From IMG/VR virus record IMGVR_UViG_3300042484_002457, positions 1-64,000 of that record: a stretch of DNA of 64,000 nucleotides. One strand, written 5' to 3'. The number at the start of each line of letters is the position of its first letter. Position 1 is the first letter of the stretch. Positions 3,474 through 58,463 of the stretch are shown here, one piece after another. The position numbers were made by a program, and so were the translations under genes. A model generated the notes under the pieces. That model saw only the letters and a list, made by a program, of their open reading frames with translations. It had not been told where the DNA came from and ran no database searches.

Positions 3474-3656
3474 TAAATAAACGCATAAAAGAAGGGCATG
3501 TAGTGGCATGCTCTTCCGTAAACAACTAGATAGGCAAAGTTCATTACCGTAAAGGTAGGAAGCACAGACAAGCTGTGTTAAAATAACTTGTAGGCAACAT
3601 TTAAGCAAGACTTAAATTTTTTAAATCATATTAACGCACATGAAAGGCAACACAAT
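3474..3656 (+). promoter_or_regulatory. TAAATA promoter plus multi-hairpin 5' leader of the ssDNA-binding protein gene
   Basis: TAAATA 3474-3479; hairpins 3491-3516, 3544-3558, 3561-3579 and 3599-3617. Confidence 0.55.
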
Positions 3657-4658
3657 ATGGCATCCTTAGCAGAAATTCGCGCACGTTTACAAGCATCCGA
3701 AAACAAAGGCTCTCAGAGCACAGGCGGTGGCGACAGGTCAATTTACCCGCACTGGAACATGGAAGAAGGACAAAGCGCAACGCTGCGATTCCTTCCCGAT
3801 GGAAACCCCAAAAACACATTCTTCTGGCAAGAGCGAGCCATGATCCGACTGCCCTTCAACGGCATCAAAGGTGAAATGGAAAGCAAGCAGGTCATGGTAC
3901 AAGTACCCTGCGTGGAAATGTGGGGCGATGCTTGCCCAATCTTGGCAGAAGTACGCACCTGGTTCAAGGACAAGAGTCTTGAAGACATGGGTCGCAAATA
4001 TTGGAAGAAGCGCAGCTACATCTTCCAAGGCTTTGTTCGTGAGAACCCCATCTCTGATGACACTACTCCGGACAATCCAATCCGTAAATTTATCATTGGT
4101 CCGCAATTGTTTACCTTGATCAAATCAGCTTTGATGGATCCTGAATTGGAAGAACTACCTACCGACTACATGCGTGGCCTTGACTTCCGTATCACCAAGA
4201 CTGCCAAGGGTGGATATGCTGATTACAACACTTCCAAGTGGGCACGTAAAGAGTCGGCACTAACTGAAGCAGAACAAGCAGCAGTTGACGCTCATGGCTT
4301 GTTTGACTTGAGCACATTCTTACCCAAGCGCCCAGGCGATGTCGAGTTGAAGGTGATTAAAGAGATGTTTGAAGCATCAGTTGACGGTCAACCATACGAT
4401 ACAGAACGTTGGGGTCAGTACTTCCGTCCAGCAGGTGTTAATGCACCAGGCGGCGCAAGTGGTGATGCAGAAACTCCAGCACCTGCCGCAGCACCTGCCC
4501 CGTCAGCTCGCCCAGCAGCACCTGCTCCAGTAGCAGAAACTCCTGCTTGGGAAGATGACGCAGCAGAAGCAGCAGCAGCACCGGTAGTTAAGCCAGCAGC
4601 TACTGGTCAAAATGCGCAAGACATTTTGGCTATGATTCGATCAAGACAAAAACAATAA
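3657..4658 (+). CDS. Single-stranded DNA-binding protein (T4 gp32-like)
   Basis: LRFLPDG, CPIL, YWKKRSY, G.DFRITK..KGGYADYNTSKW; Ala/Pro/acidic tail; next to UvsX and UvsY. Confidence 0.88.
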   Translation: MASLAEIRARLQASENKGSQSTGGGDRSIYPHWNMEEGQSATLRFLPDGNPKNTFFWQERAMIRLPFNGIKGEMESKQVMVQVPCVEMWGDACPILAEVRTWFKDKSLEDMGRKYWKKRSYIFQGFVRENPISDDTTPDNPIRKFIIGPQLFTLIKSALMDPELEELPTDYMRGLDFRITKTAKGGYADYNTSKWARKESALTEAEQAAVDAHGLFDLSTFLPKRPGDVELKVIKEMFEASVDGQPYDTERWGQYFRPAGVNAPGGASGDAETPAPAAAPAPSARPAAPAPVAETPAWEDDAAEAAAAPVVKPAATGQNAQDILAMIRSRQKQ

Positions 4659-52173: not shown

Positions 52174-52400
52174 GCAAACGCATTGGACCTATTACATTGG
52201 ACGGCGACGCAGCTGATCGCATCACTGTGCTCACGCTGAAAGAACAACGATCCTACCTCAAGAAAGAACTTGCAGAGTGGAAGAAAAATCCACGTACAGA
52301 TACCAATCCTGAGGGTGTTTGGATGCACCCTGAAGACGTGGAACTCAACACTCGCATGATTGAATCGTTGAACACTGTGATCAAATACTTTGGCGGATAA
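52170..52400 (+). CDS. Hypothetical protein
   Basis: 76 aa, coupled to the ligase. Confidence 0.65.
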   Translation: MSKRIGPITLDGDAADRITVLTLKEQRSYLKKELAEWKKNPRTDTNPEGVWMHPEDVELNTRMIESLNTVIKYFGG

Positions 52401-53034
52401 ATGAACAACGATCAAAGTGCCAACGAGTCATAGCAGATATTCCTCCAGTTTTGCTGCAATGCGGGCAAGTGGCTAATGGTTTAGATTTTCCTCTATTGCT
52501 ATTACCAATTTTTTCTTTTGTTTCTTCAGAAATAACTTGCAACGATCTTGCCGCCTTAATTTTTTGTTTAGTTTCATTGGTATGAGCTCGGTGGTGTCCG
52601 GTCCCTTTTCCAGTTCTTCCTTTGCTAATTTTTATCCTATCACCAACTGATCGAGTCTTGCCTTTCCAGAAACCAACTGCACCCTTGTGTCCTTTGTTCG
52701 GAGGGGGTCGTCCAAGCCCTGCAATAGAAATCTTATTTCTTGATTCGGCGCTTAATTTTCCTCGGGCATCACCAGTTTCTTCTTTAAGATTAGCCCATTC
52801 ATTGCTTTCGACTATATTCCAAAGATTACTATAAAACAATCCCCAGTATGAAAATTCATCTTTAGTATGACACTCTTTTATAATTTCTGTGCGATAATCT
52901 TTTCCGTGTTTTTTTAAATGTGATTTCCAATAAGTGCCTGATCCAGGATACTTGTGAGGATCTTTTGACTCGGTCTTGCCAAGATATTTGAGACCAGTAA
53001 CATTGTGGGTTTTGACGTACAGGTAAATAGTCAT
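52381..53034 (-). mobile_element. Free-standing GIY-YIG (Seg-like) homing endonuclease with NUMOD3 and C-terminal Zn ribbon
   Basis: IYLYVKTH..TGLKYLGKT, Y.GSG.YW..HL.KHG, WANL.EE.G; CPHC...RWHFDRC; antisense to the operon. Confidence 0.85.
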
Positions 53035-53562: not shown

Positions 53563-53861
53563 ACTACGAACATATCGGTTGGTGTCGTGAAGGTACCTCT
53601 GACAAAGTATGGGGAGCTATCTGTTTGAGTCACTCAGGGACATCCTATGGTGACAACAAGTATGTTACCTTTTGGGGTCGCCGTGGTAAAAAACTTCAAA
53701 CTAAAATTGTTGAAGGTAATAACTGGACAATCAATTTGATGTTTATTAAGAAACAAGACAAGGGATACGTTTCAGTTGATATCAAAAGACTCAACGAAGT
53801 GTATCCAGAGTTCCAACAAGATTTAGAAAAGACTGCCTTCTGGGCAACATTACGAGCATGA
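53559..53861 (+). CDS. WGR-domain-like protein
   Basis: SDKVW...FWGRRG...K..KGY. Confidence 0.65.
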   Translation: MNYEHIGWCREGTSDKVWGAICLSHSGTSYGDNKYVTFWGRRGKKLQTKIVEGNNWTINLMFIKKQDKGYVSVDIKRLNEVYPEFQQDLEKTAFWATLRA

Positions 53862-54325
53862 AAAAAGTCTACTATGTCAAAGAGGGTCGCAGGTACAAAC
53901 CAGTGGCCGAGTACGACAATGATCTTATGGATAGTTTTCACAAAGGTGCTCATCTTGTGATGGTATATCCAGGCGGCCAGTCTCGCCGTTTTAACATTGA
54001 CCCAAATTATGCTGCTATGATTGCAGCTGGCCGAGTGGCCGAGGATGCTATGTGCAAGGCCATGATGGAGTCTAGCGAATTAAGACCACAGCGAACTCCA
54101 TTGACCCCTGGTCAACTAAGGGCATGGAAAAAATTAGCCAAAGAGTTCGGGGAAGAACTCTGCACTCTACAAGGTTCAAGCACACGTGACATTGTAGAAG
54201 CCGGAGTGCAGGCCATGCAGGCCGAAGCTGATCTTCTGATGCAACACCCAGCGGTTCAAGATGCATATCAGCAGTTTCAACTGGTGTGTGAATTAGTAAA
54301 GCACAAAGATTGCCATACCGATTGA
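53858..54325 (+). CDS. Hypothetical protein
   Basis: 155 aa, ATGA overlap. Confidence 0.7.
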   Translation: MKKVYYVKEGRRYKPVAEYDNDLMDSFHKGAHLVMVYPGGQSRRFNIDPNYAAMIAAGRVAEDAMCKAMMESSELRPQRTPLTPGQLRAWKKLAKEFGEELCTLQGSSTRDIVEAGVQAMQAEADLLMQHPAVQDAYQQFQLVCELVKHKDCHTD

Positions 54326-54351
54326 CCTCAGTACCAATGCTGTTGTATAAT
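54322..54351 (+). promoter_or_regulatory. sigma70-like promoter
   Basis: TTGACC-N18-TATAAT. Confidence 0.7.
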
Positions 54352-54357
54352 TACTGT

Positions 54358-54540
54358 GCATAGCGTTGGACCTGGCCAGGATATTATGGTTGCCAAACGG
54401 AAGCAAGGATAGCTTTAAGTCGACCCTTGCTATTATCTGTGGCTCTTTGGTGTAAATCCATGAGGTGTGGCACTGTCCTAGACGCAAGTCAAAACCTGGC
54501 TGATACCCGGGAGTAAGCCCATTAGGATAAAACAGTGAAA
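54358..54540 (+). ncRNA. Candidate structured ncRNA or cis-regulatory leader (~180 nt)
   Basis: Six predicted helices, a T-loop-like TGGTGTAAATCCA, a GNRA loop (GAC-GCAA-GTC) and a 7-bp long-range pseudoknot, in an ORF-free gap after a promoter. Confidence 0.55.
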
Positions 54541-54547
54541 GGACTTT

Positions 54548-54871
54548 ATGTCTGTTAATATTGAAACCGCTGCCGGTAACGGTACGTTGCAGTCTCTTGA
54601 CCCGCTTAAAACAACGACCGATGCTATGCACCTATATCGCGTCGTGGTTGAATTGGAAAATACTGATGAATGGTATGCCATCATCCGCGAAGCACAACGA
54701 CTGTTTGGCCCTGGAAACTGGGACAGTCAACCCAGAGTAAAACGCAAGCTAGAACGCAATCGCTGGACCCAAGCCAAGGTTCGAGTTTGGTTTGATGTTC
54801 CTGAGGTCAGTTTTGGTACCTGGGTTGGTGTTAAACTAGCAGTTAGGGTGCTGAGTGTGGCCAATAAATAA
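54548..54871 (+). CDS. Hypothetical protein
   Basis: AAGGA SD; 107 aa. Confidence 0.65.
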   Translation: MSVNIETAAGNGTLQSLDPLKTTTDAMHLYRVVVELENTDEWYAIIREAQRLFGPGNWDSQPRVKRKLERNRWTQAKVRVWFDVPEVSFGTWVGVKLAVRVLSVANK

Positions 54872-54875
54872 TCTT

Positions 54876-56261
54876 ATGTTCCTCAGTTATATTACTTTGG
54901 CAGTTGCACTAAGCCTGTCAGTTATTGCCGCCTACTACTCCATTGCTGGCCTCACCGCAATCTTTGCCGCTGCTGTGATCCCTATTGTGATCATGGGTGG
55001 CATATTGGAAGTGGGCAAAGTTGTAGTTACCCTGTGGCTGCACGAGTACTGGCAACAGTGTCGTTTGCTGATGAAAATGTACCTGGTTCCAGCTGTGGCT
55101 GTGCTGATGCTGATCACCAGCATGGGCATTTTTGGTTTCTTGAGCAAGGCACACAGTGATCAAAGCATGGTATCAGGAGACGTGCAGGCCAAGATTGCAG
55201 TCTACGACGAAAAAATAAAAGTATCACAGGACAACATTGATGTTAATCGCAAAGCACTTAAACAGCTCGATGAGGCGGTGGATCAAAGCATGGCACGCTC
55301 GACAACAGAAACGGGTGCTGACAAAGCAGTGGCCATCCGTAAGTCGCAAGCAAAAGAAAGATCTAGACTACTGGCTGAAATTGCAGCCGAACAGAAAACA
55401 ATTAGTGCTCTTAGACAAGAACGAGCACCCATATCGGCCGAAGTACGAAAGGTTGAAGCCGAAGTTGGACCTATAAAATACATAGCCAAGTTGATCTACG
55501 GGGACAACCCCGATGCCAACCTGCTGGAAAAAGCAGTGACCTGGGTTATCATTGTGATTGTTGCGGTGTTTGATCCATTGGCTATCATGATGTTGTTGGC
55601 TGCAACAGAAAGTTTGAAGTGGGGGCGAGAAAAGCGATTGGCGCCGCAACCAACAGAATCCAACAGTGAACCAGAAGTAGAGGAACAGCCACCTGCAGAA
55701 CCAGAACCTGAAAAATCTATACTGGAACAACATCCGTACCTTACCCAAGGATTTGCGCACTTTACAGACTTGCAGCCCATAGTACACAAACCTGAGCCAA
55801 AAATTGATCCAGTGCCGGTTGAAGTTGCTCAGTCAGTAGAAGATGAAGAAGAGCGACCTGAGGTACAAGATGCAATTCGTCGATGGAAAGCAGAGAATCC
55901 CAACGACACATTGAAAAATCAGCGAGCACGCCTGGCACGTGGGGAAATTGACGAGCTGCCTTGGATGCAGTTGATCCAAGTATTGCCAGCTGCCACTAAC
56001 TCAGGGTATGGGAATCAGTTCCCGGGTAATGCCAACAAAGGCGACATATTTGTAAGAATTGACAAACTGCCCAATTTGGTCTATAAGTACAATGGTAATA
56101 ACTGGATTAAAATTGACAAAAATCTAACAGACAGTTACACTTATGATGTTGCCTACATTGATCACCTAATTGACAGAATCAGTTGTGGTGAGTACGACAC
56201 CGAGCTTTTGAGCGAAAGCGAAAAAGAACAAGTTAAACAACGTTTAGAAAATCGAGCATGA
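54876..56261 (+). CDS. Membrane-anchored coiled-coil protein
   Basis: N-terminal TM helices (AAYYSIAGL, TSMGIFGFLSKAH), coiled coil, EAEVGPIKYIA, TM VFDPLA; TAAATA 5 nt upstream. Confidence 0.75.
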   Translation: MFLSYITLAVALSLSVIAAYYSIAGLTAIFAAAVIPIVIMGGILEVGKVVVTLWLHEYWQQCRLLMKMYLVPAVAVLMLITSMGIFGFLSKAHSDQSMVSGDVQAKIAVYDEKIKVSQDNIDVNRKALKQLDEAVDQSMARSTTETGADKAVAIRKSQAKERSRLLAEIAAEQKTISALRQERAPISAEVRKVEAEVGPIKYIAKLIYGDNPDANLLEKAVTWVIIVIVAVFDPLAIMMLLAATESLKWGREKRLAPQPTESNSEPEVEEQPPAEPEPEKSILEQHPYLTQGFAHFTDLQPIVHKPEPKIDPVPVEVAQSVEDEEERPEVQDAIRRWKAENPNDTLKNQRARLARGEIDELPWMQLIQVLPAATNSGYGNQFPGNANKGDIFVRIDKLPNLVYKYNGNNWIKIDKNLTDSYTYDVAYIDHLIDRISCGEYDTELLSESEKEQVKQRLENRA

Positions 56262-57460
56262 AACAAACTGAAACCCAAGATACTTGCAACTTTTGCGGTA
56301 AACACAAAGATGCAGTGGCCAAGCTCATAGTAGGTGAAGATGTGGCCATCTGCAATGAGTGTGTGGAGTTGTGCCAAACGTTGTTGAAAGACGACACACC
56401 AGTCAAAGCTGCTGTTAATGCAATCCTAGATCCACTAAAAGTCAAACAACATCTAGACCAATACGTGATTGGACAAACACGAGCCAAGCAGTTGTTGAGC
56501 GTGGCTATTGTAAACCACTACAAGCGCATCAATAACCCCAATCCTGAAACTGAAATTGAAAAGACCAACATCCTCATGCTTGGCCCCACAGGCTCAGGAA
56601 AAACTTTGTTGGCTCGCAGTGTAGCACGTTATCTTGACGTGCCCTTTGTTATTGCTGATGCCACCAGTTTGACCGAAGCTGGTTATGTAGGCGATGATGT
56701 AGAAAGCTTGATCTCAAGACTTTTTGCTGCCGCTGAATACAGTGTTGAACGTTGCCAGCGTGGCATTGTGTTCATTGACGAAATTGACAAAATTAGTCGT
56801 CGCAGCGAAAGTGCCAGTATCACACGAGATGTCAGCGGCGAGGGTGTTCAGCAGGCCCTGCTCAAGCTGGTAGAAGGCACCAAGTGCCGCATCACTCCAC
56901 AGGGCGGGCGCAAGCACCCATCAGGTGAGACCGTGGAAATTGACACCACAAACATTTTGTTCATTGCTGGCGGAGCATTTGTGGGACTGGACAATCTTGT
57001 CAAGAGTCGTATCAAGGGCACCAGCATTGGGTTTAATGCACAGGTGGTCAAGGACTCCAAGCCCAGCTTGGATCATACCACACCTGAAGACCTTATCAAG
57101 TTTGGCATGATTCCTGAGTTTGTGGGGCGTTTCCCCAGTTGGGTGGCACTCAGTGAGCTTTCCAAGCAGGATCTTGTGCACATTCTGCAAGACGTCAAGC
57201 ACAGCTATGTGTCGCAGTATTCATGGTTGTTTGGTGTTGACGAAATTGAACTGGACTTTACACCTGAAAGCCTGGATCTCATTGCTGAACGCACTCTTGC
57301 TAACAAAACTGGAGCTCGTGGGCTGCACAGTGAACTAGAACGTGTGTTGCTGCCACACATGTTTTACCTTGCAGAGTATCGCAGACAAGGCATCAAGACC
57401 GTGACAATTGACGTTGAGCAAGTAAATACTCCAAAGGAGCTTCGAGTTGTAAATGGGTAA
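56258..57460 (+). CDS. clpX: ClpX ATPase
   Basis: C4 Zn-binding domain, [12 protein letters not shown] pore loop, [23 protein letters not shown] loop, GARGL. Confidence 0.96.
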
Positions 57461-57677
57461 ACTTTATGGTAGATCAGTGTTGGTACAAGACGGCCAAGTT
57501 GATCGAGCACTGCGTAAATTAAAAAAGAAGGTACAGGCATCAGGTTTGATGGAAGAGCTGCAACAACGAGCACACTACATCAAACCCACAACGGCCCGCA
57601 AAATCCAGGCAGGCGCTGCAAGATCGCGCTGGCGCAAAAAGCTTCGTGAGCAAGAACTGCCTAAAAAACTGTACTAA
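57453..57677 (+). CDS. rpsU: Ribosomal protein bS21
   Basis: V.V....VDRALRKLKKKV...G...EL..R.HY.KPT..R. Confidence 0.88.
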   Translation: MGKLYGRSVLVQDGQVDRALRKLKKKVQASGLMEELQQRAHYIKPTTARKIQAGAARSRWRKKLREQELPKKLY

Positions 57678-57940
57678 TGTACATTGAGTTCAGTCTGGTT
57701 GGGTGGTCAATTCGAGCAAGCTACGAGATTGACCACGCTCTACAGGAGTGGAGCAACAAATACAATATCCCTTATAACGTAAAAAACGTCAAGGAGTTCA
57801 AACGCACAACGTTTGATCAGGACGAGTATTATTCATTGTTTGCTATGACATGGAATCCTGATCAAAAACATCCTGCTTTGGGCAGGTGGCGCATTGTGTC
57901 TGACCTAAATAACAAAATAGAATTCAGTTCTAGTGTATAA
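57677..57940 (+). CDS. Hypothetical protein
   Basis: 87 aa, coupled to rpsU. Confidence 0.6.
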   Translation: MYIEFSLVGWSIRASYEIDHALQEWSNKYNIPYNVKNVKEFKRTTFDQDEYYSLFAMTWNPDQKHPALGRWRIVSDLNNKIEFSSSV

Positions 57941-58010
57941 TAAATACTCTTGTAAAGTGCTGATAAGCAGGCTTTACAAAGTCATAAATCGCTTAATAAA
58001 GGAGAATAAC

Positions 58011-58463
58011 ATGACAAAAACTTTAACTCTTCGTTCTTTCGACATTCCCGCAATCACCAAATTTGGTATCGGCTTTGATAACATGTTTGATGAACTCATG
58101 CGGGTAAGCGCCCAACAAGGCTCAACAAATTATCCACCCTACAACATTGTACAAATCAACGAAGATGAGTACATGATTAGTCTTGCTGTGGCTGGTTTTG
58201 GGCTTGATAATCTCTCAGTTACCAAGGACAAAAATTTCTTGATCATTGAAGGCAAAGAATATCAGTCTGACAGCGAAAAGATTGTGCCAAACTACCTGCA
58301 CAAAGGTATTAGCAATAGAGATTTCCGTCGTGAATTCCAACTTGCAGATCATGTGGAAATCAACAATGCGCACCTTGAACTTGGTATCTTGAATGTGCGT
58401 TTAAAGCGCGAAGTTCCTGAGGAAGCCAGGCCTAAAACTATTGCTATCACTTACAAAACTTGA
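58011..58463 (+). CDS. Small heat-shock protein (Hsp20/IbpA-like)
   Basis: IGFD, NYPPYNI, LAVAGF, YLHKGIS.R.F.R.F.LA, GIL. Confidence 0.93.
   Translation: MTKTLTLRSFDIPAITKFGIGFDNMFDELMRVSAQQGSTNYPPYNIVQINEDEYMISLAVAGFGLDNLSVTKDKNFLIIEGKEYQSDSEKIVPNYLHKGISNRDFRREFQLADHVEINNAHLELGILNVRLKREVPEEARPKTIAITYKT

What the first reader, a model, noticed from the sequence alone, without database searches (positions are those of the whole stretch)
54358..54540. Candidate ~180-nt pseudoknotted ncRNA with T-loop and GNRA loop
Seen, directly after a sigma70 promoter: CGTTGG/CCAAACG (54364-54399); AGCAAGG/CCTTGCT (54402-54431); CTC..TGG-TGTAAAT-CCA.GAG (54443-54464, T-loop-like); and a multibranch domain closed by CACTGT-CCTA/TAGG..ACAGTG (54471-54537) containing GAC-GCAA-GTC and GGG-AGTAAG-CCC. 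Loop GGCCAGG (54374-54380) can pair with CCTGGCT (54495-54501). The structure ends at the SD of ORF 54548. Inference: a complex tertiary RNA (ribozyme, riboswitch-like leader or phage sRNA); it is not a tRNA and I cannot assign a family.
Basis: partly seen in the sequence, partly recalled or inferred. Interest (0 to 1): 0.65.

Follow-up and report, generated by a model that had tools for sequence, protein, structure and literature searches.

The report
New structured leader RNA in lake phages
The flagged stretch is a real, strongly conserved, pseudoknotted RNA of about 180-195 bases that matches no Rfam family. It forms the 5' leader of one small gene of unknown function in a large group of freshwater jumbo phages, and what it senses is not known.

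Summary
A near-consensus sigma-70 promoter (54322-54351) is followed by a leader (about 54358-54547) that ends 1 nt before the SD of ORF 54548-54871.

I collected 104 unique homologues from viral, metagenome and one MAG contig. On a covariance-model alignment of 100 of them, 87-89% of pair cells are paired, against 74% in shuffles. 30-31 pairs show compensatory changes. The covariation score is 0.38-0.43, against 0.16-0.17 shuffled and 0.05-0.12 slid.

- **Supported helices:** long-range H1, Pb, Pa, P1, P2, P3 (GNRA loop), P4, and a pseudoknot GGCU/AGCC.
AGCAAGG/CCTTGCT, CACTGT-CCTA/TAGG-ACAGTG and GAC-GCAA-GTC.
CGTTGG/CCAAACG, the T-loop hairpin, GGG/CCC and the GGCCAGG/CCTGGCT pseudoknot.

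No Rfam family matches, and no tRNA was found.

The RNA and the about 105-aa protein co-occur 80/80 from either side. The protein has a ferredoxin-like model and no known family.

The most likely role is a cis translational operator, possibly controlled by the gene's own product. A riboswitch is the main rival. The palindromic Pa loops hint at RNA dimerisation.

The parts
54322..54351 (+). Sigma-70-type promoter: TTGACC (54322-27), 18-nt spacer, TATAAT (54346-51)
   Evidence: One search gives 11 of 12 matches. Across 93 distinct homologous upstream regions, TTGACA occurs in 77, TATAAT in 78 and a 17-nt spacer in 77. The -10 hexamer ends 6-8 nt before the conserved GCA.
54358..54391 (+). Leader segment with no supported pairing, starting at the inferred transcription start (GCA). 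54358-54369 is a 12-nt extension specific to the window's clade. 54371-54380 (CCUGGCCAGG) is a 10-nt palindrome. In other clades this segment reads GCAUGAYCARGGAGRU (SD-like, purine-rich).
   Evidence: alignments. No helix involving this segment passed the column-pair scans. The start site is inferred from promoter geometry only.
54392..54396 (+). H1 5' strand (GCCAA), pairs with 54447-54451
   Evidence: The five core pairs are paired in 72-100 of 100 sequences, with 3-5 pair types each. Examples are GCUGA/UCAGC, GUUCA/UGAAC, AUCUA/UAGAU and GUUUG/CAAAC. An optional sixth outer pair (col 25/112) is paired in only 44 of 100.
54397..54400 (+). Pb 5' strand (ACGG), pairs with 54437-54440 (CUGU)
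   Evidence: 98.5% of cells are paired. There is a G-C to A-U compensatory change in 6 sequences and a U-G to C-G change in 3.
54402..54431 (+). Pa hairpin: AGCAAGG (54402-08) / CCUUGCU (54425-31), with a variable apical loop 54409-24 that contains the palindromes AGCU and GUCGAC
   Evidence: All 10 model pairs show compensatory changes, with up to 6 pair types per column. Palindrome enrichment in the apical loop: 42 of 50 unique loops, against 9.9 +/- 2.8 in shuffles.
54437..54440 (+). Pb 3' strand (CUGU), part of the invariant CYGUGGC block
54441..54444 (+). Pseudoknot H3 5' strand (GGCU), in the bulge between Pb and H1; pairs with 54516-54519 (AGCC)
   Evidence: 99.8% of cells are paired. 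The fourth pair is A-U in 88 sequences and U-A in 12, with no exception, in at least three lineages. The first pair is G-C in 82, G-U in 17 and unpaired in 1.
54447..54451 (+). H1 3' strand (UUGGU)
54452..54470 (+). Conserved linker (GUAAAUCCAUGAGGUGUGG; family consensus RUAARUCC..AGG.UG.GA), pairing unresolved
Evidence: conservation. A mini-hairpin I tried is not supported either (helix 5, 43.6% paired).
54471..54476 (+). P1 5' strand (CACUGU), pairs with 54532-54537 (ACAGUG)
   Evidence: Four of 6 pairs show compensatory changes, for example CACUGA/UCAGUG, CACUGC/GCAGUG and CAAGG/UCUGG.
54477..54480 (+). P2 5' strand (CCUA), pairs with 54523-54526 (UAGG)
   Evidence: All 4 pairs show compensatory changes and 93% of cells are paired. 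Examples are CUCA/UGAG, CUUA/UAAG, CCAA/UUGG, CCUC/GAGG and CCUU/AAGG.
54481..54490 (+). P3 hairpin GAC-GCAA-GUC, with a GNRA tetraloop at 54484-87
   Evidence: 94.5% of cells are paired. Stem length varies from 3 to 6 bp. Loops seen in the homologues inspected are mostly GCAA, GAAA and GUAA, by eye and not counted.
54491..54494 (+). J3/4, AAAA of the near-invariant UCAAAAC block
   Evidence: invariant columns
54495..54511 (+). P4 hairpin CCUGG (54495-99) / CCGGG (54507-11), with the 7-nt loop CUGAUAC (family consensus YUGGUAS)
   Evidence: 95% of cells are paired, and one column has 6 pair types. Examples are CCAGG/CCUGG, ACUCGG/CCGAGU and ACACUGG/CCAGUGG.
54512..54522 (+). J4/2 (AGUAAGCCCAU). 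54516-19 (AGCC) is the 3' strand of pseudoknot H3.
54523..54537 (+). P2 3' strand UAGG (54523-26), A-rich J2/1 (54527-31), P1 3' strand ACAGUG (54532-37)
54538..54550 (+). Shine-Dalgarno AAAGGA (54538-43) and start codon ATG (54548-50), starting 1 nt after P1
   Evidence: GAAAGGA is nearly invariant
54548..54871 (+). ORF of 107 aa, the gene that always follows the RNA. N-terminal 24 residues are predicted disordered, followed by a ferredoxin-like beta-alpha-beta core. No known family.
   Evidence: Linkage.

Best explanation
This is a genuine structured RNA family that matches no Rfam model. It is the 5' leader, about 155-200 nt long, of one small gene in a large group of uncultured freshwater jumbo phages. 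I did not see it outside that group.

**Shown**
- It is transcribed from a near-consensus host-type sigma-70 promoter.
- It folds into two domains. Domain 1 is a coaxial H1-Pb-Pa stack. Domain 2 is P1-P2 closing a three-way junction that carries P3 (GNRA loop) and P4 (invariant 7-nt loop).
- The domains are tied together by a 4-bp pseudoknot between a bulge of domain 1 and junction J4/2 of domain 2.
- The fold ends 0-3 nt before the Shine-Dalgarno sequence.

**Inferred**
- It acts in cis on translation initiation of the downstream ORF, and probably of the membrane-protein gene that abuts that ORF. A factor bound to the compact fold would hinder or help 30S binding at the adjacent SD.
- The most likely factor is the ORF's own product, a small ferredoxin-like protein with invariant aromatic and basic residues. 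That would be autogenous control of the kind known for T4 gene 32 and ribosomal-protein operons.

That the RNA is real and new to Rfam I hold at about 0.95. That it is a cis translational operator I hold at about 0.6. The autogenous version I hold at about 0.35-0.4.
For: **Conservation and structure**
- 104 unique full-length homologues were collected.
- A covariance-model alignment of 100 sequences scores 82-178 bits.
- 87-89% of pair cells are paired, against 74% in shuffles (0 of 500 shuffles reach it).
- 30-31 pairs have compensatory changes: 666-672 double-change cells, against about 230 +/- 17.
- The covariation score is 0.38-0.43, against 0.16-0.17 shuffled and 0.05-0.12 when partners are slid by 1-3 columns.

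**Strand**
There are 418 G-U cells against 80 A-C cells. The U-G pair in Pb is present in 96 of 100 sequences. This fits the + strand only.

**Pseudoknot**
99.8% of cells are paired, and the A-U/U-A swap has no exception.

**Promoter**
TTGACA-17-TATAAT is conserved.

**Cis role**
- The SD starts 1 nt after P1.
- No terminator-like site lies in the window's leader.
- 80 of 80 loci fetched by protein patterns alone carry the RNA ending at the start codon.
- 80 of 80 evaluable RNA instances fetched by a DNA pattern alone are followed by the protein gene. One further hit, L257, was a chance match inside an unrelated gene.
- When extra genes are inserted after the upstream 155-aa gene, the RNA stays with the downstream ORF.

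**Protein**
- The model has pLDDT 78 overall and above 85 for residues 30-107, with a beta-alpha-beta-alpha-beta ferredoxin-like core.
- W42, Y43, W58, R66, W81, F82, W92 and K96 are invariant. K65 and Q61 are nearly invariant.
Against: - No binding data exist.
- The protein matches no RNA-binding family. Its fold matches are generic: Z is at most 7.7, and the Foldseek E-value is at least 0.1.
- The size, the invariant junction and loop nucleotides and the pseudoknot are more typical of riboswitches and ribozymes than of most protein operators.
- No conserved alternative pairing sequesters the SD. The best partner is the P2 5' strand, in only about 40% of sequences, at about -6.5 kcal/mol. The switching mechanism is therefore not visible in the sequence.
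- The leader could also be a constitutive element.
Confidence: 0.45

Rival explanations
1. It is a small-molecule or ion-sensing riboswitch. The two-domain pseudoknotted fold is an aptamer whose ligand-dependent stabilisation of P1, P2 and H3 changes ribosome access to the SD that abuts P1. This would let the phage tune an early gene to the host's metabolic state.
For: - It is a complex multi-helix junction with a pseudoknot.
- Invariant nucleotides are concentrated in junctions and loops: CGUGGC, UG.GAC, UCAAAAC, YUGGUASCC and GUAWGC.
- It lies in a 5' UTR ending at the SD.
- It belongs to no known class, so it would be a new one.
Against: - It is linked to a single gene family of unknown function, not to a set of pathway genes.
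- No conserved alternative SD-sequestering or terminator structure was found.
- There is no clue to a ligand.
Confidence: 0.25
2. It is an RNA with a function of its own, a ribonucleoprotein partner of the small protein or a self-associating 'ornate' RNA. Being upstream of the ORF would then serve co-expression. Palindromic loop sequences would mediate homodimer or multimer formation by kissing interactions.
For: - 42 of 50 unique Pa apical loops contain at least one 6-nt palindrome, against 9.9 +/- 2.8 (maximum 19) in 1000 shuffles.
- In 31 of 50 the palindrome sits at a fixed place next to the stem. Its sequence changes while staying self-complementary: CCCGGG, ACCGGU, CCUAGG, GUCGAC. A 6-nt palindrome cannot fold on itself.
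- The strict 1:1 RNA-protein linkage also fits an RNP.
- Natural RNA-only multimers are documented for OLE, ROOL and GOLLD (bioRxiv 10.1101/2024.12.08.627333, seen).
Against: - No terminator or processing signal separates the RNA from the ORF.
- Eight of the 50 unique loops have no 6-nt palindrome, including the mini-variants that lack the Pa apex altogether.
- The first palindrome can also be read as a short stem closing a tetraloop.
- The palindromes could act at the DNA level.
Confidence: 0.12
3. It is a constitutive leader with no sensor. It could be an mRNA-stabilising or translation-enhancing structure. It could also be an RNA that modifies the transcribing RNA polymerase just after an early promoter, as HK022 put RNA does.
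For: - It lies immediately downstream of a strong, conserved early-type promoter.
- No conserved alternative fold was found.
Against: - About 45 conserved base pairs, a pseudoknot and many invariant unpaired nucleotides are far more than stabilisation needs.
- The extreme 5' end has no supported pairing, so it gives no obvious protection from 5'-end-dependent decay.
- put RNAs are two simple stem-loops of about 70 nt (from my own knowledge).
Confidence: 0.1
4. It is a self-cleaving or other catalytic RNA that processes the 5' end of the transcript.
For: Only the general resemblance: a compact pseudoknotted fold with invariant core nucleotides.
Against: - It matches no ribozyme family in Rfam, even at E up to 10.
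- No conserved candidate cleavage site was seen.
Confidence: 0.03
5. It is not an RNA element. The conservation would reflect a DNA-level site, a small unannotated ORF, or chance.
For: - Single-sequence folding energy is at chance level, z = 0.11.
- The region contains palindromes, which can be protein-binding DNA sites.
Against: - Hundreds of compensatory double changes keep pairing in seven helices.
- G-U pairs fit one strand only.
- No reading frame is conserved through the leader, judged by reading a few sequences by eye. The window has no + strand ORF of 40 aa or more in 54358-54547.
Confidence: 0.02

Closest known systems
Autogenous translational operators in phage and ribosomal-protein mRNAs (T4 gene 32 leader pseudoknot; S15, L20 and S6:S18 leaders; E. 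coli thrS operator)
   Same: - It is a structured element, often pseudoknotted, in the 5' UTR of the regulator's own mRNA, placed against the SD.
- It shows one-to-one linkage of RNA and gene.
- It has a phage early/middle gene context.
   Different: - It is much larger and more conserved in sequence than those operators.
- It has no sequence or model similarity to any of them that are in Rfam.
- The protein is not a known nucleic-acid binder, and binding is untested.
- The T4 gene 32 comparison rests on my own knowledge and on PMC10690425, section 2.6.
Translation-controlling riboswitches (for example the cobalamin, TPP and SAM-II/preQ1 classes)
   Same: - A 5' UTR aptamer-like multi-helix junction with a pseudoknot.
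- Invariant junction nucleotides.
- The closing helix P1 lies next to the ribosome-binding site.
   Different: - It matches no known class.
- No ligand is known.
- No conserved alternative expression-platform fold was detected.
- It is associated with one hypothetical gene only.
Candidate structured RNAs catalogued from IMG/VR (Fremin et al. 2023, PMC10690425)
   Same: The source data are the same (IMG/VR phage contigs), and so is the kind of object: covariation-supported intergenic motifs upstream of phage genes.
   Different: - That catalogue's motifs are 29-151 nt long, shorter than this RNA.
- I could not check whether part of this RNA is among the 8,495 entries, because no supplementary files are held.
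Large 'ornate' RNAs found on phages and prophages that self-assemble (ROOL, GOLLD, OLE)
   Same: - A phage-borne, intricately folded RNA.
- Self-complementary loop sequences that could mediate RNA-RNA contacts.
   Different: - It is three to four times smaller.
- It is fused to an mRNA rather than free-standing.
- It has no Rfam match to these families.
- Self-association is only inferred.
HIV-1 dimerisation initiation site type kissing loop
   Same: A 6-nt palindrome lies in a hairpin loop and is flanked by unpaired purines, for example GUGA-AUCGAU-AA and G(A/G)U-CCUAGG.
   Different: It is unrelated in origin. Here there are often two palindromes per loop, and function is untested. The resemblance is recalled from my own knowledge and was not tested.

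Membership tests
Any Rfam 15 family (4227 models, including riboswitches, ribozymes, manA, raiA, FMN, cobalamin, ROOL/GOLLD, HEARO, YrlA) | Covariance-model score at or above the family's gathering threshold | tested here: not met
   - There were 0 hits in the whole window at gathering threshold.
- Only two chance-level hits (E about 5) appeared in 54200-54700.
- There were 0 hits at E up to 1 in ten diverse homologous loci.
tRNA / tRNA-like element with T-loop | Cloverleaf detectable by ARAGORN; a conserved T-arm hairpin with a UUCRA-type loop | tested here: not met
   - ARAGORN found no gene in the window.
- The proposed T-loop hairpin UGG-UGUAAAU-CCA is paired in only 31% of cells in homologues. 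Its 5' arm instead belongs to H1.
Riboswitch (as a kind) | Conserved, structured aptamer in the 5' UTR of the regulated gene | tested here: met
Riboswitch (as a kind) | Direct, selective binding of a small ligand | not testable with these tools
   This needs in-line probing, ITC or a reporter assay.
Riboswitch (as a kind) | Expression platform with mutually exclusive folds (terminator/antiterminator or SD/anti-SD) | tested here: inconclusive
   - No terminator-like site lies in the window's leader.
- The best SD partner is the P2 5' strand in about 40% of sequences, at about -6.5 kcal/mol.
Riboswitch (as a kind) | Association with genes of a common pathway or transport function | tested here: not met
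   It is always found upstream of one hypothetical protein family. That family comprises 864 clusters, none with a Pfam domain among the 120 best listed.
Autogenous translational operator | The element lies in the 5' UTR of the regulator's own mRNA, next to or overlapping the ribosome-binding site | tested here: met
   The SD starts 1 nt after P1, and the RNA ends at the start codon in 80 of 80 loci.
Autogenous translational operator | Strict co-occurrence of RNA and protein gene | tested here: met
   80/80 from the protein side. 80/80 evaluable instances from the RNA side.
Autogenous translational operator | The encoded protein binds the leader RNA | not testable with these tools
   - The fold is ferredoxin-like with conserved aromatic and basic residues.
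- The fold matches are generic.
HK022 put-type polymerase-modifying RNA | Two simple stem-loops of about 70 nt just downstream of an early promoter, acting on downstream terminators | tested here: not met
   The position after an early promoter fits. The architecture does not: there are eight helices, a pseudoknot and about 190 nt. The put definition comes from my own knowledge.
Kissing-loop self-associating RNA | A self-complementary loop sequence kept through sequence change | tested here: met
   - 42 of 50 loops have a 6-nt palindrome, against 9.9 +/- 2.8 in shuffles.
- CCCGGG, ACCGGU, CCUAGG and GUCGAC occur at a fixed site.
Kissing-loop self-associating RNA | Dimer or multimer formation | not testable with these tools
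   This needs native gels, SEC-MALS or cryo-EM.

The most novel reading that the evidence does not exclude
The RNA is a new class of sensor or assembly RNA in jumbo phages. One version is a riboswitch for a host metabolite or signalling molecule that gates an early phage operon. The other is an RNA, or an RNA-protein particle with the about 105-aa partner, that dimerises through the palindromic Pa loops and has a function beyond regulating its own mRNA.
Probability: 0.35. Interest if true: 0.85.

Novelty: new variant of a known kind. Interest (0 to 1): 0.68.

Why it matters
Structured RNAs of this size, with eight covariation-supported helices and an inter-domain pseudoknot, are uncommon. Many of those found earlier turned out to be riboswitches, ribozymes or RNP scaffolds.

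This one is widespread. There are 104 unique variants and 864 clusters of the partner protein in lake metagenomes. It is tied to a gene of unknown function expressed from a consensus promoter, which should make it easy to express in E. coli.

The model is directly testable, with defined compensatory mutants for H1, P4 and H3. It could reveal a new regulatory ligand or protein-RNA pair in jumbo phages, which are otherwise hard to study.

The case also shows that a single-sequence folding-energy test would have discarded a real RNA.

Tried and rejected
- **Rfam.** Searched at gathering threshold and at permissive E-values on the window and on ten homologues. Nothing was found.
- **ARAGORN.** No tRNA or tmRNA.
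- **GenBank phage collection.** Megablast and blastn of the region found no match. tblastn with the ClpX-like protein found only distant relatives, all below 60% identity.
- **Single-sequence MFE.** z = 0.11, so it is uninformative.
- **RNAalifold on raw MAFFT alignment A1.** It recovered only 9 pairs because indels were misplaced. I replaced it with a manual and column-scan structure plus a covariance-model realignment.
Rejected as described above.
- **My own candidate pseudoknot GUGG (54439-42) / CCAU (54458-61).** Dropped. It competes with Pb and H3, which pair in 98.5-99.8% of cells.
- **Mini-hairpin in the linker.** 43.6% paired, rejected.
- **5' purine-rich segment pairing with the linker.** Only 73-77% paired with an internal mismatch, not claimed.
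- **Leader pairing with the first 60 nt of the ORF.** The best candidate is the L4 loop with ORF nt 6-10. It is nearly all G-U pairs with one-sided changes, not claimed.
- **P4 loop as an anticodon-arm mimic (CU-GGU-AC).** Considered and dropped. The middle position varies between G and A (window and L071), and nothing else supports it.
- **Conserved upstream ORF in the leader.** Frames and lengths differ between clades, judged by reading a few sequences by eye. Not supported.
- **Protein function.** Searched Pfam, PHROGs, NCBIfam, PADLOC, PDB sequences, Foldseek against the PDB and VIA-align. No specific match.
- **PMC10690425 supplement.** Not held, so overlap with that catalogue could not be checked.
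- **Chance pattern matches.** L241, L242, L244-L246 and L257 were chance matches to the DNA pattern.
Full report
**What is at the coordinates**

The window carries TTGACC-18-TATAAT at 54322-54351, 11 of 12 consensus matches. An intergenic stretch of about 190 nt follows. Then come the Shine-Dalgarno sequence AAAGGA (54538-43) and the ATG of a 107-aa ORF (54548-54871).

On the single sequence the fold is not special. The MFE is -51.3 kcal/mol, against -51.75 +/- 4.05 for dinucleotide shuffles, z = 0.11. Rfam gives nothing at gathering threshold and only E about 5 noise when relaxed. ARAGORN finds no tRNA.

**Source**

The window is part of a 209.5-kb IMG/VR contig. It has no nucleotide match among GenBank phages. 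Its genes are typical of the replication and nucleotide-metabolism region of a jumbo phage: helicases, DnaB, class I ribonucleotide reductase, an ATP-dependent ligase, a ClpX-like ATPase, Hsp20 and a bS21 homologue.

**Homologues**

- The upstream 155-aa protein fetched 80 related viral loci. blastn showed the intergenic element conserved in a subset, sometimes 1-3 kb further from that gene.
- A first alignment showed conserved blocks and obvious compensatory changes.
- A degenerate DNA pattern from the most conserved block retrieved 78 viral contigs, 93 metagenome contigs and one true genome-collection hit. That hit is a contig binned with a Haliscomenobacter MAG.
- This gave 179 full-length instances, 104 of them unique, with an effective number of about 37-40 at 90% identity.
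- Nearly all keep TTGACA (77 of 93), TATAAT (78 of 93) and a 17-nt spacer (77 of 93). The -10 hexamer ends 6-8 nt before a conserved GCA.

**Structure**

RNAalifold on raw MAFFT output failed because of misplaced indels. A column-pair scan was more useful. Its best-covarying helix was long-range, 54392-96 (GCCAA) with 54447-51 (UUGGU). It also recovered P2, Pa, P3 and P4.

I wrote a consensus structure on alignment A3, built covariance model R1 and realigned 100 sequences (A4; 82-178 bits; one hit in the window, 54370-54551). A rescan of A4 added Pb, and it also recovered the pseudoknot H3, first noticed by eye.

The final model in window coordinates:

| Element | 5' strand | 3' strand | Note |
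|---|---|---|---|
| H1 | 54392-96 | 54447-51 | long-range |
| Pb | 54397-400 | 54437-40 | |
| Pa | 54402-08 | 54425-31 | variable apical loop 54409-24 |
| H3 (pseudoknot) | 54441-44 (GGCU) | 54516-19 (AGCC) | joins the two domains |
| P1 | 54471-76 | 54532-37 | |
| P2 | 54477-80 | 54523-26 | |
| P3 | 54481-83 | 54488-90 | loop GCAA |
| P4 | 54495-99 | 54507-11 | loop CUGAUAC |

All 34 nested pairs are canonical or G-U in the window sequence.

**Tests of the structure**

- For the 40-pair model, 89.4% of cells are paired, against 73.8 +/- 0.4% in shuffles.
- 30 pairs have changes on both sides.
- There are 666 double-change cells, against 229 +/- 17.
- The covariation score is 0.426, against 0.173 shuffled. 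No shuffle in 500 reaches any of these values.
- Sliding the 3' partners by 1-3 columns, which keeps the relatedness of the sequences, gives 32-44% pairing and scores of 0.05-0.12.
- Adding Pb keeps the picture.
- Pb and H3 alone are 99.1% paired, against 29-37% when slid. They have 18 double-change cells, against 1.8 +/- 1.2.
- In H3 the fourth pair is A-U in 88 sequences and U-A in 12, with no exception. The swap occurs in the window's clade, in the short-variant clade and in L264.
- G-U cells (418) far outnumber A-C cells (80), so the + strand is the folded one.

The alignment was fitted to the model, which favours it somewhat. The main helices were already visible in the unfitted MAFFT alignment.

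- **Confirmed:** Pa, P1, P2, P3 and the GNRA loop.
- **Not supported:** the T-loop hairpin (31% and 55% paired for its two parts), GGG/CCC (76%, but it competes with P4, which is 95% paired and has six pair types in one column) and the pseudoknot GGCCAGG/CCUGGCU (64%). Together these are 58.3% paired, against 57.2% in shuffles.
- **CGTTGG/CCAAACG:** it uses a 12-nt 5' extension that exists only in the window's clade. There it keeps 3-5 of 6 pairs, while H1 is 5/5 with the compensatory change GCCAA/UUGGU to GCUGA/UCAGC.

**Linkage to the gene**

- The RNA always ends at the start of a protein of about 105 aa.
- Loci fetched with protein patterns only (VWF[DE]VPD and another) all carry the RNA directly upstream, 80 of 80, down to a 36-bit divergent variant.
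- Conversely, all 80 evaluable RNA instances fetched by the DNA pattern alone are followed by the gene. The single exception was a chance match inside a TonB-type receptor gene.
- In a short-variant lineage (L008 and similar) Pa is nearly absent and the ORF starts 29 nt further downstream, but the pair stays together.
- No terminator-like site lies between promoter and ORF in the window.

**The protein**

- No hit in Pfam, PHROGs, NCBIfam, PADLOC or PDB sequences.
- A profile search found 864 clusters. In the 120 best listed, all but one of the names given are 'hypothetical protein' and none has a Pfam domain.
- AlphaFold gives a confident ferredoxin-like core for residues 28-107 and a disordered N-terminus.
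- Fold matches are generic ACT, HMA, PII and S6-like domains: Foldseek E at least 0.1, Z at most 7.7.
- Several Trp, Tyr and Phe residues and an R/K-rich helix are invariant.

**Mechanism**

*Shown:* a conserved two-domain pseudoknotted leader, transcribed from a host-type promoter, whose closing helix P1 ends 0-3 nt before the SD.

*Inferred:* it controls translation initiation in cis. I looked for a conserved anti-SD. The best partner is the P2 5' strand, whose normal partner resembles an SD, but only in about 40% of sequences and weakly. The switch is therefore not visible.

The strict one-gene linkage favours an operator for the gene's own product, or an RNP. The complexity and the invariant junction nucleotides favour a riboswitch. 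I rank autogenous or trans-factor control first and a riboswitch second.

**A further feature**

- The Pa apical loops are rich in 6-nt palindromes: 42 of 50 unique loops, against 9.9 +/- 2.8 in shuffles.
- In 31 of 50 one sits at a fixed place against the stem. It changes sequence while staying self-complementary: CCCGGG, ACCGGU, CCUAGG, GUCGAC.
- A hexamer palindrome cannot pair with itself within one molecule. This points to RNA-RNA kissing (dimerisation) or to a DNA-level site.
- Natural RNA-only multimers are known for ROOL, GOLLD and OLE (10.1101/2024.12.08.627333).
- This is a hypothesis, not a finding.

**Novelty**

- No Rfam family matches the window or ten diverse homologues.
- A catalogue of 8,495 candidate structured RNAs from IMG/VR exists (PMC10690425). 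Its motifs are 29-151 nt long, and I could not check overlap.
- I therefore treat this as a new family of a known kind, a structured cis-acting leader. There is a fair chance that it is a new riboswitch class or an RNP or assembly RNA.

Noticed in passing
window 57453-57677 (+): The 74-aa ORF is a ribosomal protein bS21 homologue (TIGR00030, 53.2 bits against a cutoff of 28.95). It lies between the ClpX-like gene and Hsp20. Phage-encoded bS21 is known in freshwater huge phages, but in a different, structural-gene context (PMC9723584).
   Followed up: partly
window 56258-57460 (+) and 57933-58463 (+): A ClpX-like AAA+ ATPase with an N-terminal C4 zinc finger and an Hsp20 small heat-shock protein lie about 1.4-3.1 kb downstream of the ORF's end on the same strand. 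They may be co-transcribed with it.
   Followed up: partly
window 54409-54424, and Pa apical loops of homologues (A4 columns 47-78): Six-nt palindromes are strongly enriched in the Pa apical loop: 42 of 50 unique loops, against about 10 expected. One sits at a fixed position and covaries while staying self-complementary (CCCGGG, ACCGGU, CCUAGG, GUCGAC). This suggests kissing-loop dimerisation or a DNA-level site.
   Followed up: partly
window 54371-54380: CCUGGCCAGG is a perfect 10-nt palindrome in the 5' segment of the window's clade that has no supported pairing. Other clades have CAUG, UGAUCA or GCAUGC at the equivalent 5' end.
   Followed up: no
window 54548-54573 and homologues: The first 26 or so nt of the ORF are unusually conserved at the nucleotide level, including third codon positions (AUGUCUGUUGAAAUUGAAACCUCUGC). 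Protein identity across the family is only 40-73%. No convincing pairing with the leader was found.
   Followed up: partly
L243 (NZ_JBBAKG010000057.1, 39-kb contig of a Haliscomenobacter sp. MAG), 3615-3809: This is the only hit in the genome collection, a contig binned with a Bacteroidota MAG. The family, however, uses a TTGACA-17-TATAAT promoter and an AAGGA Shine-Dalgarno. From my own knowledge these are not typical of Bacteroidota. The binning or the host inference is therefore doubtful.
   Followed up: no
window 52381-53034 (-): A homing endonuclease (NUMOD3; PHROG 314) lies on the opposite strand, between the DNA ligase gene and the hypothetical genes upstream of the RNA.
   Followed up: no
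window 53858-54325 (+), loci L006-L085: The upstream 155-aa hypothetical protein is very widely conserved: 134 viral loci, with 63-100% identity among the best 80. Its distance to the RNA-ORF module varies from about 30 nt to about 3 kb or more because of inserted genes.
   Followed up: partly
L008 3493-3647, L011 4067-4219, L109, L142, L353, L355, L360: These are short variants of the RNA, about 155-160 nt and 74-88 bits. They lack most of the 5' segment and the Pa apex but keep H1, Pb, H3 and P1-P4. In L008 the ORF starts 29 nt after the RNA instead of directly after the SD.
   Followed up: partly
window 54855/54876-56261 (+): The next gene encodes a protein of about 461-468 aa with hydrophobic N-terminal helices and a long charged middle, and no family match. 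It starts within about 5 nt of the small ORF's stop, or overlaps it by 17 nt if the GTG start is used. Translational coupling to the leader-controlled ORF is therefore possible.
   Followed up: no
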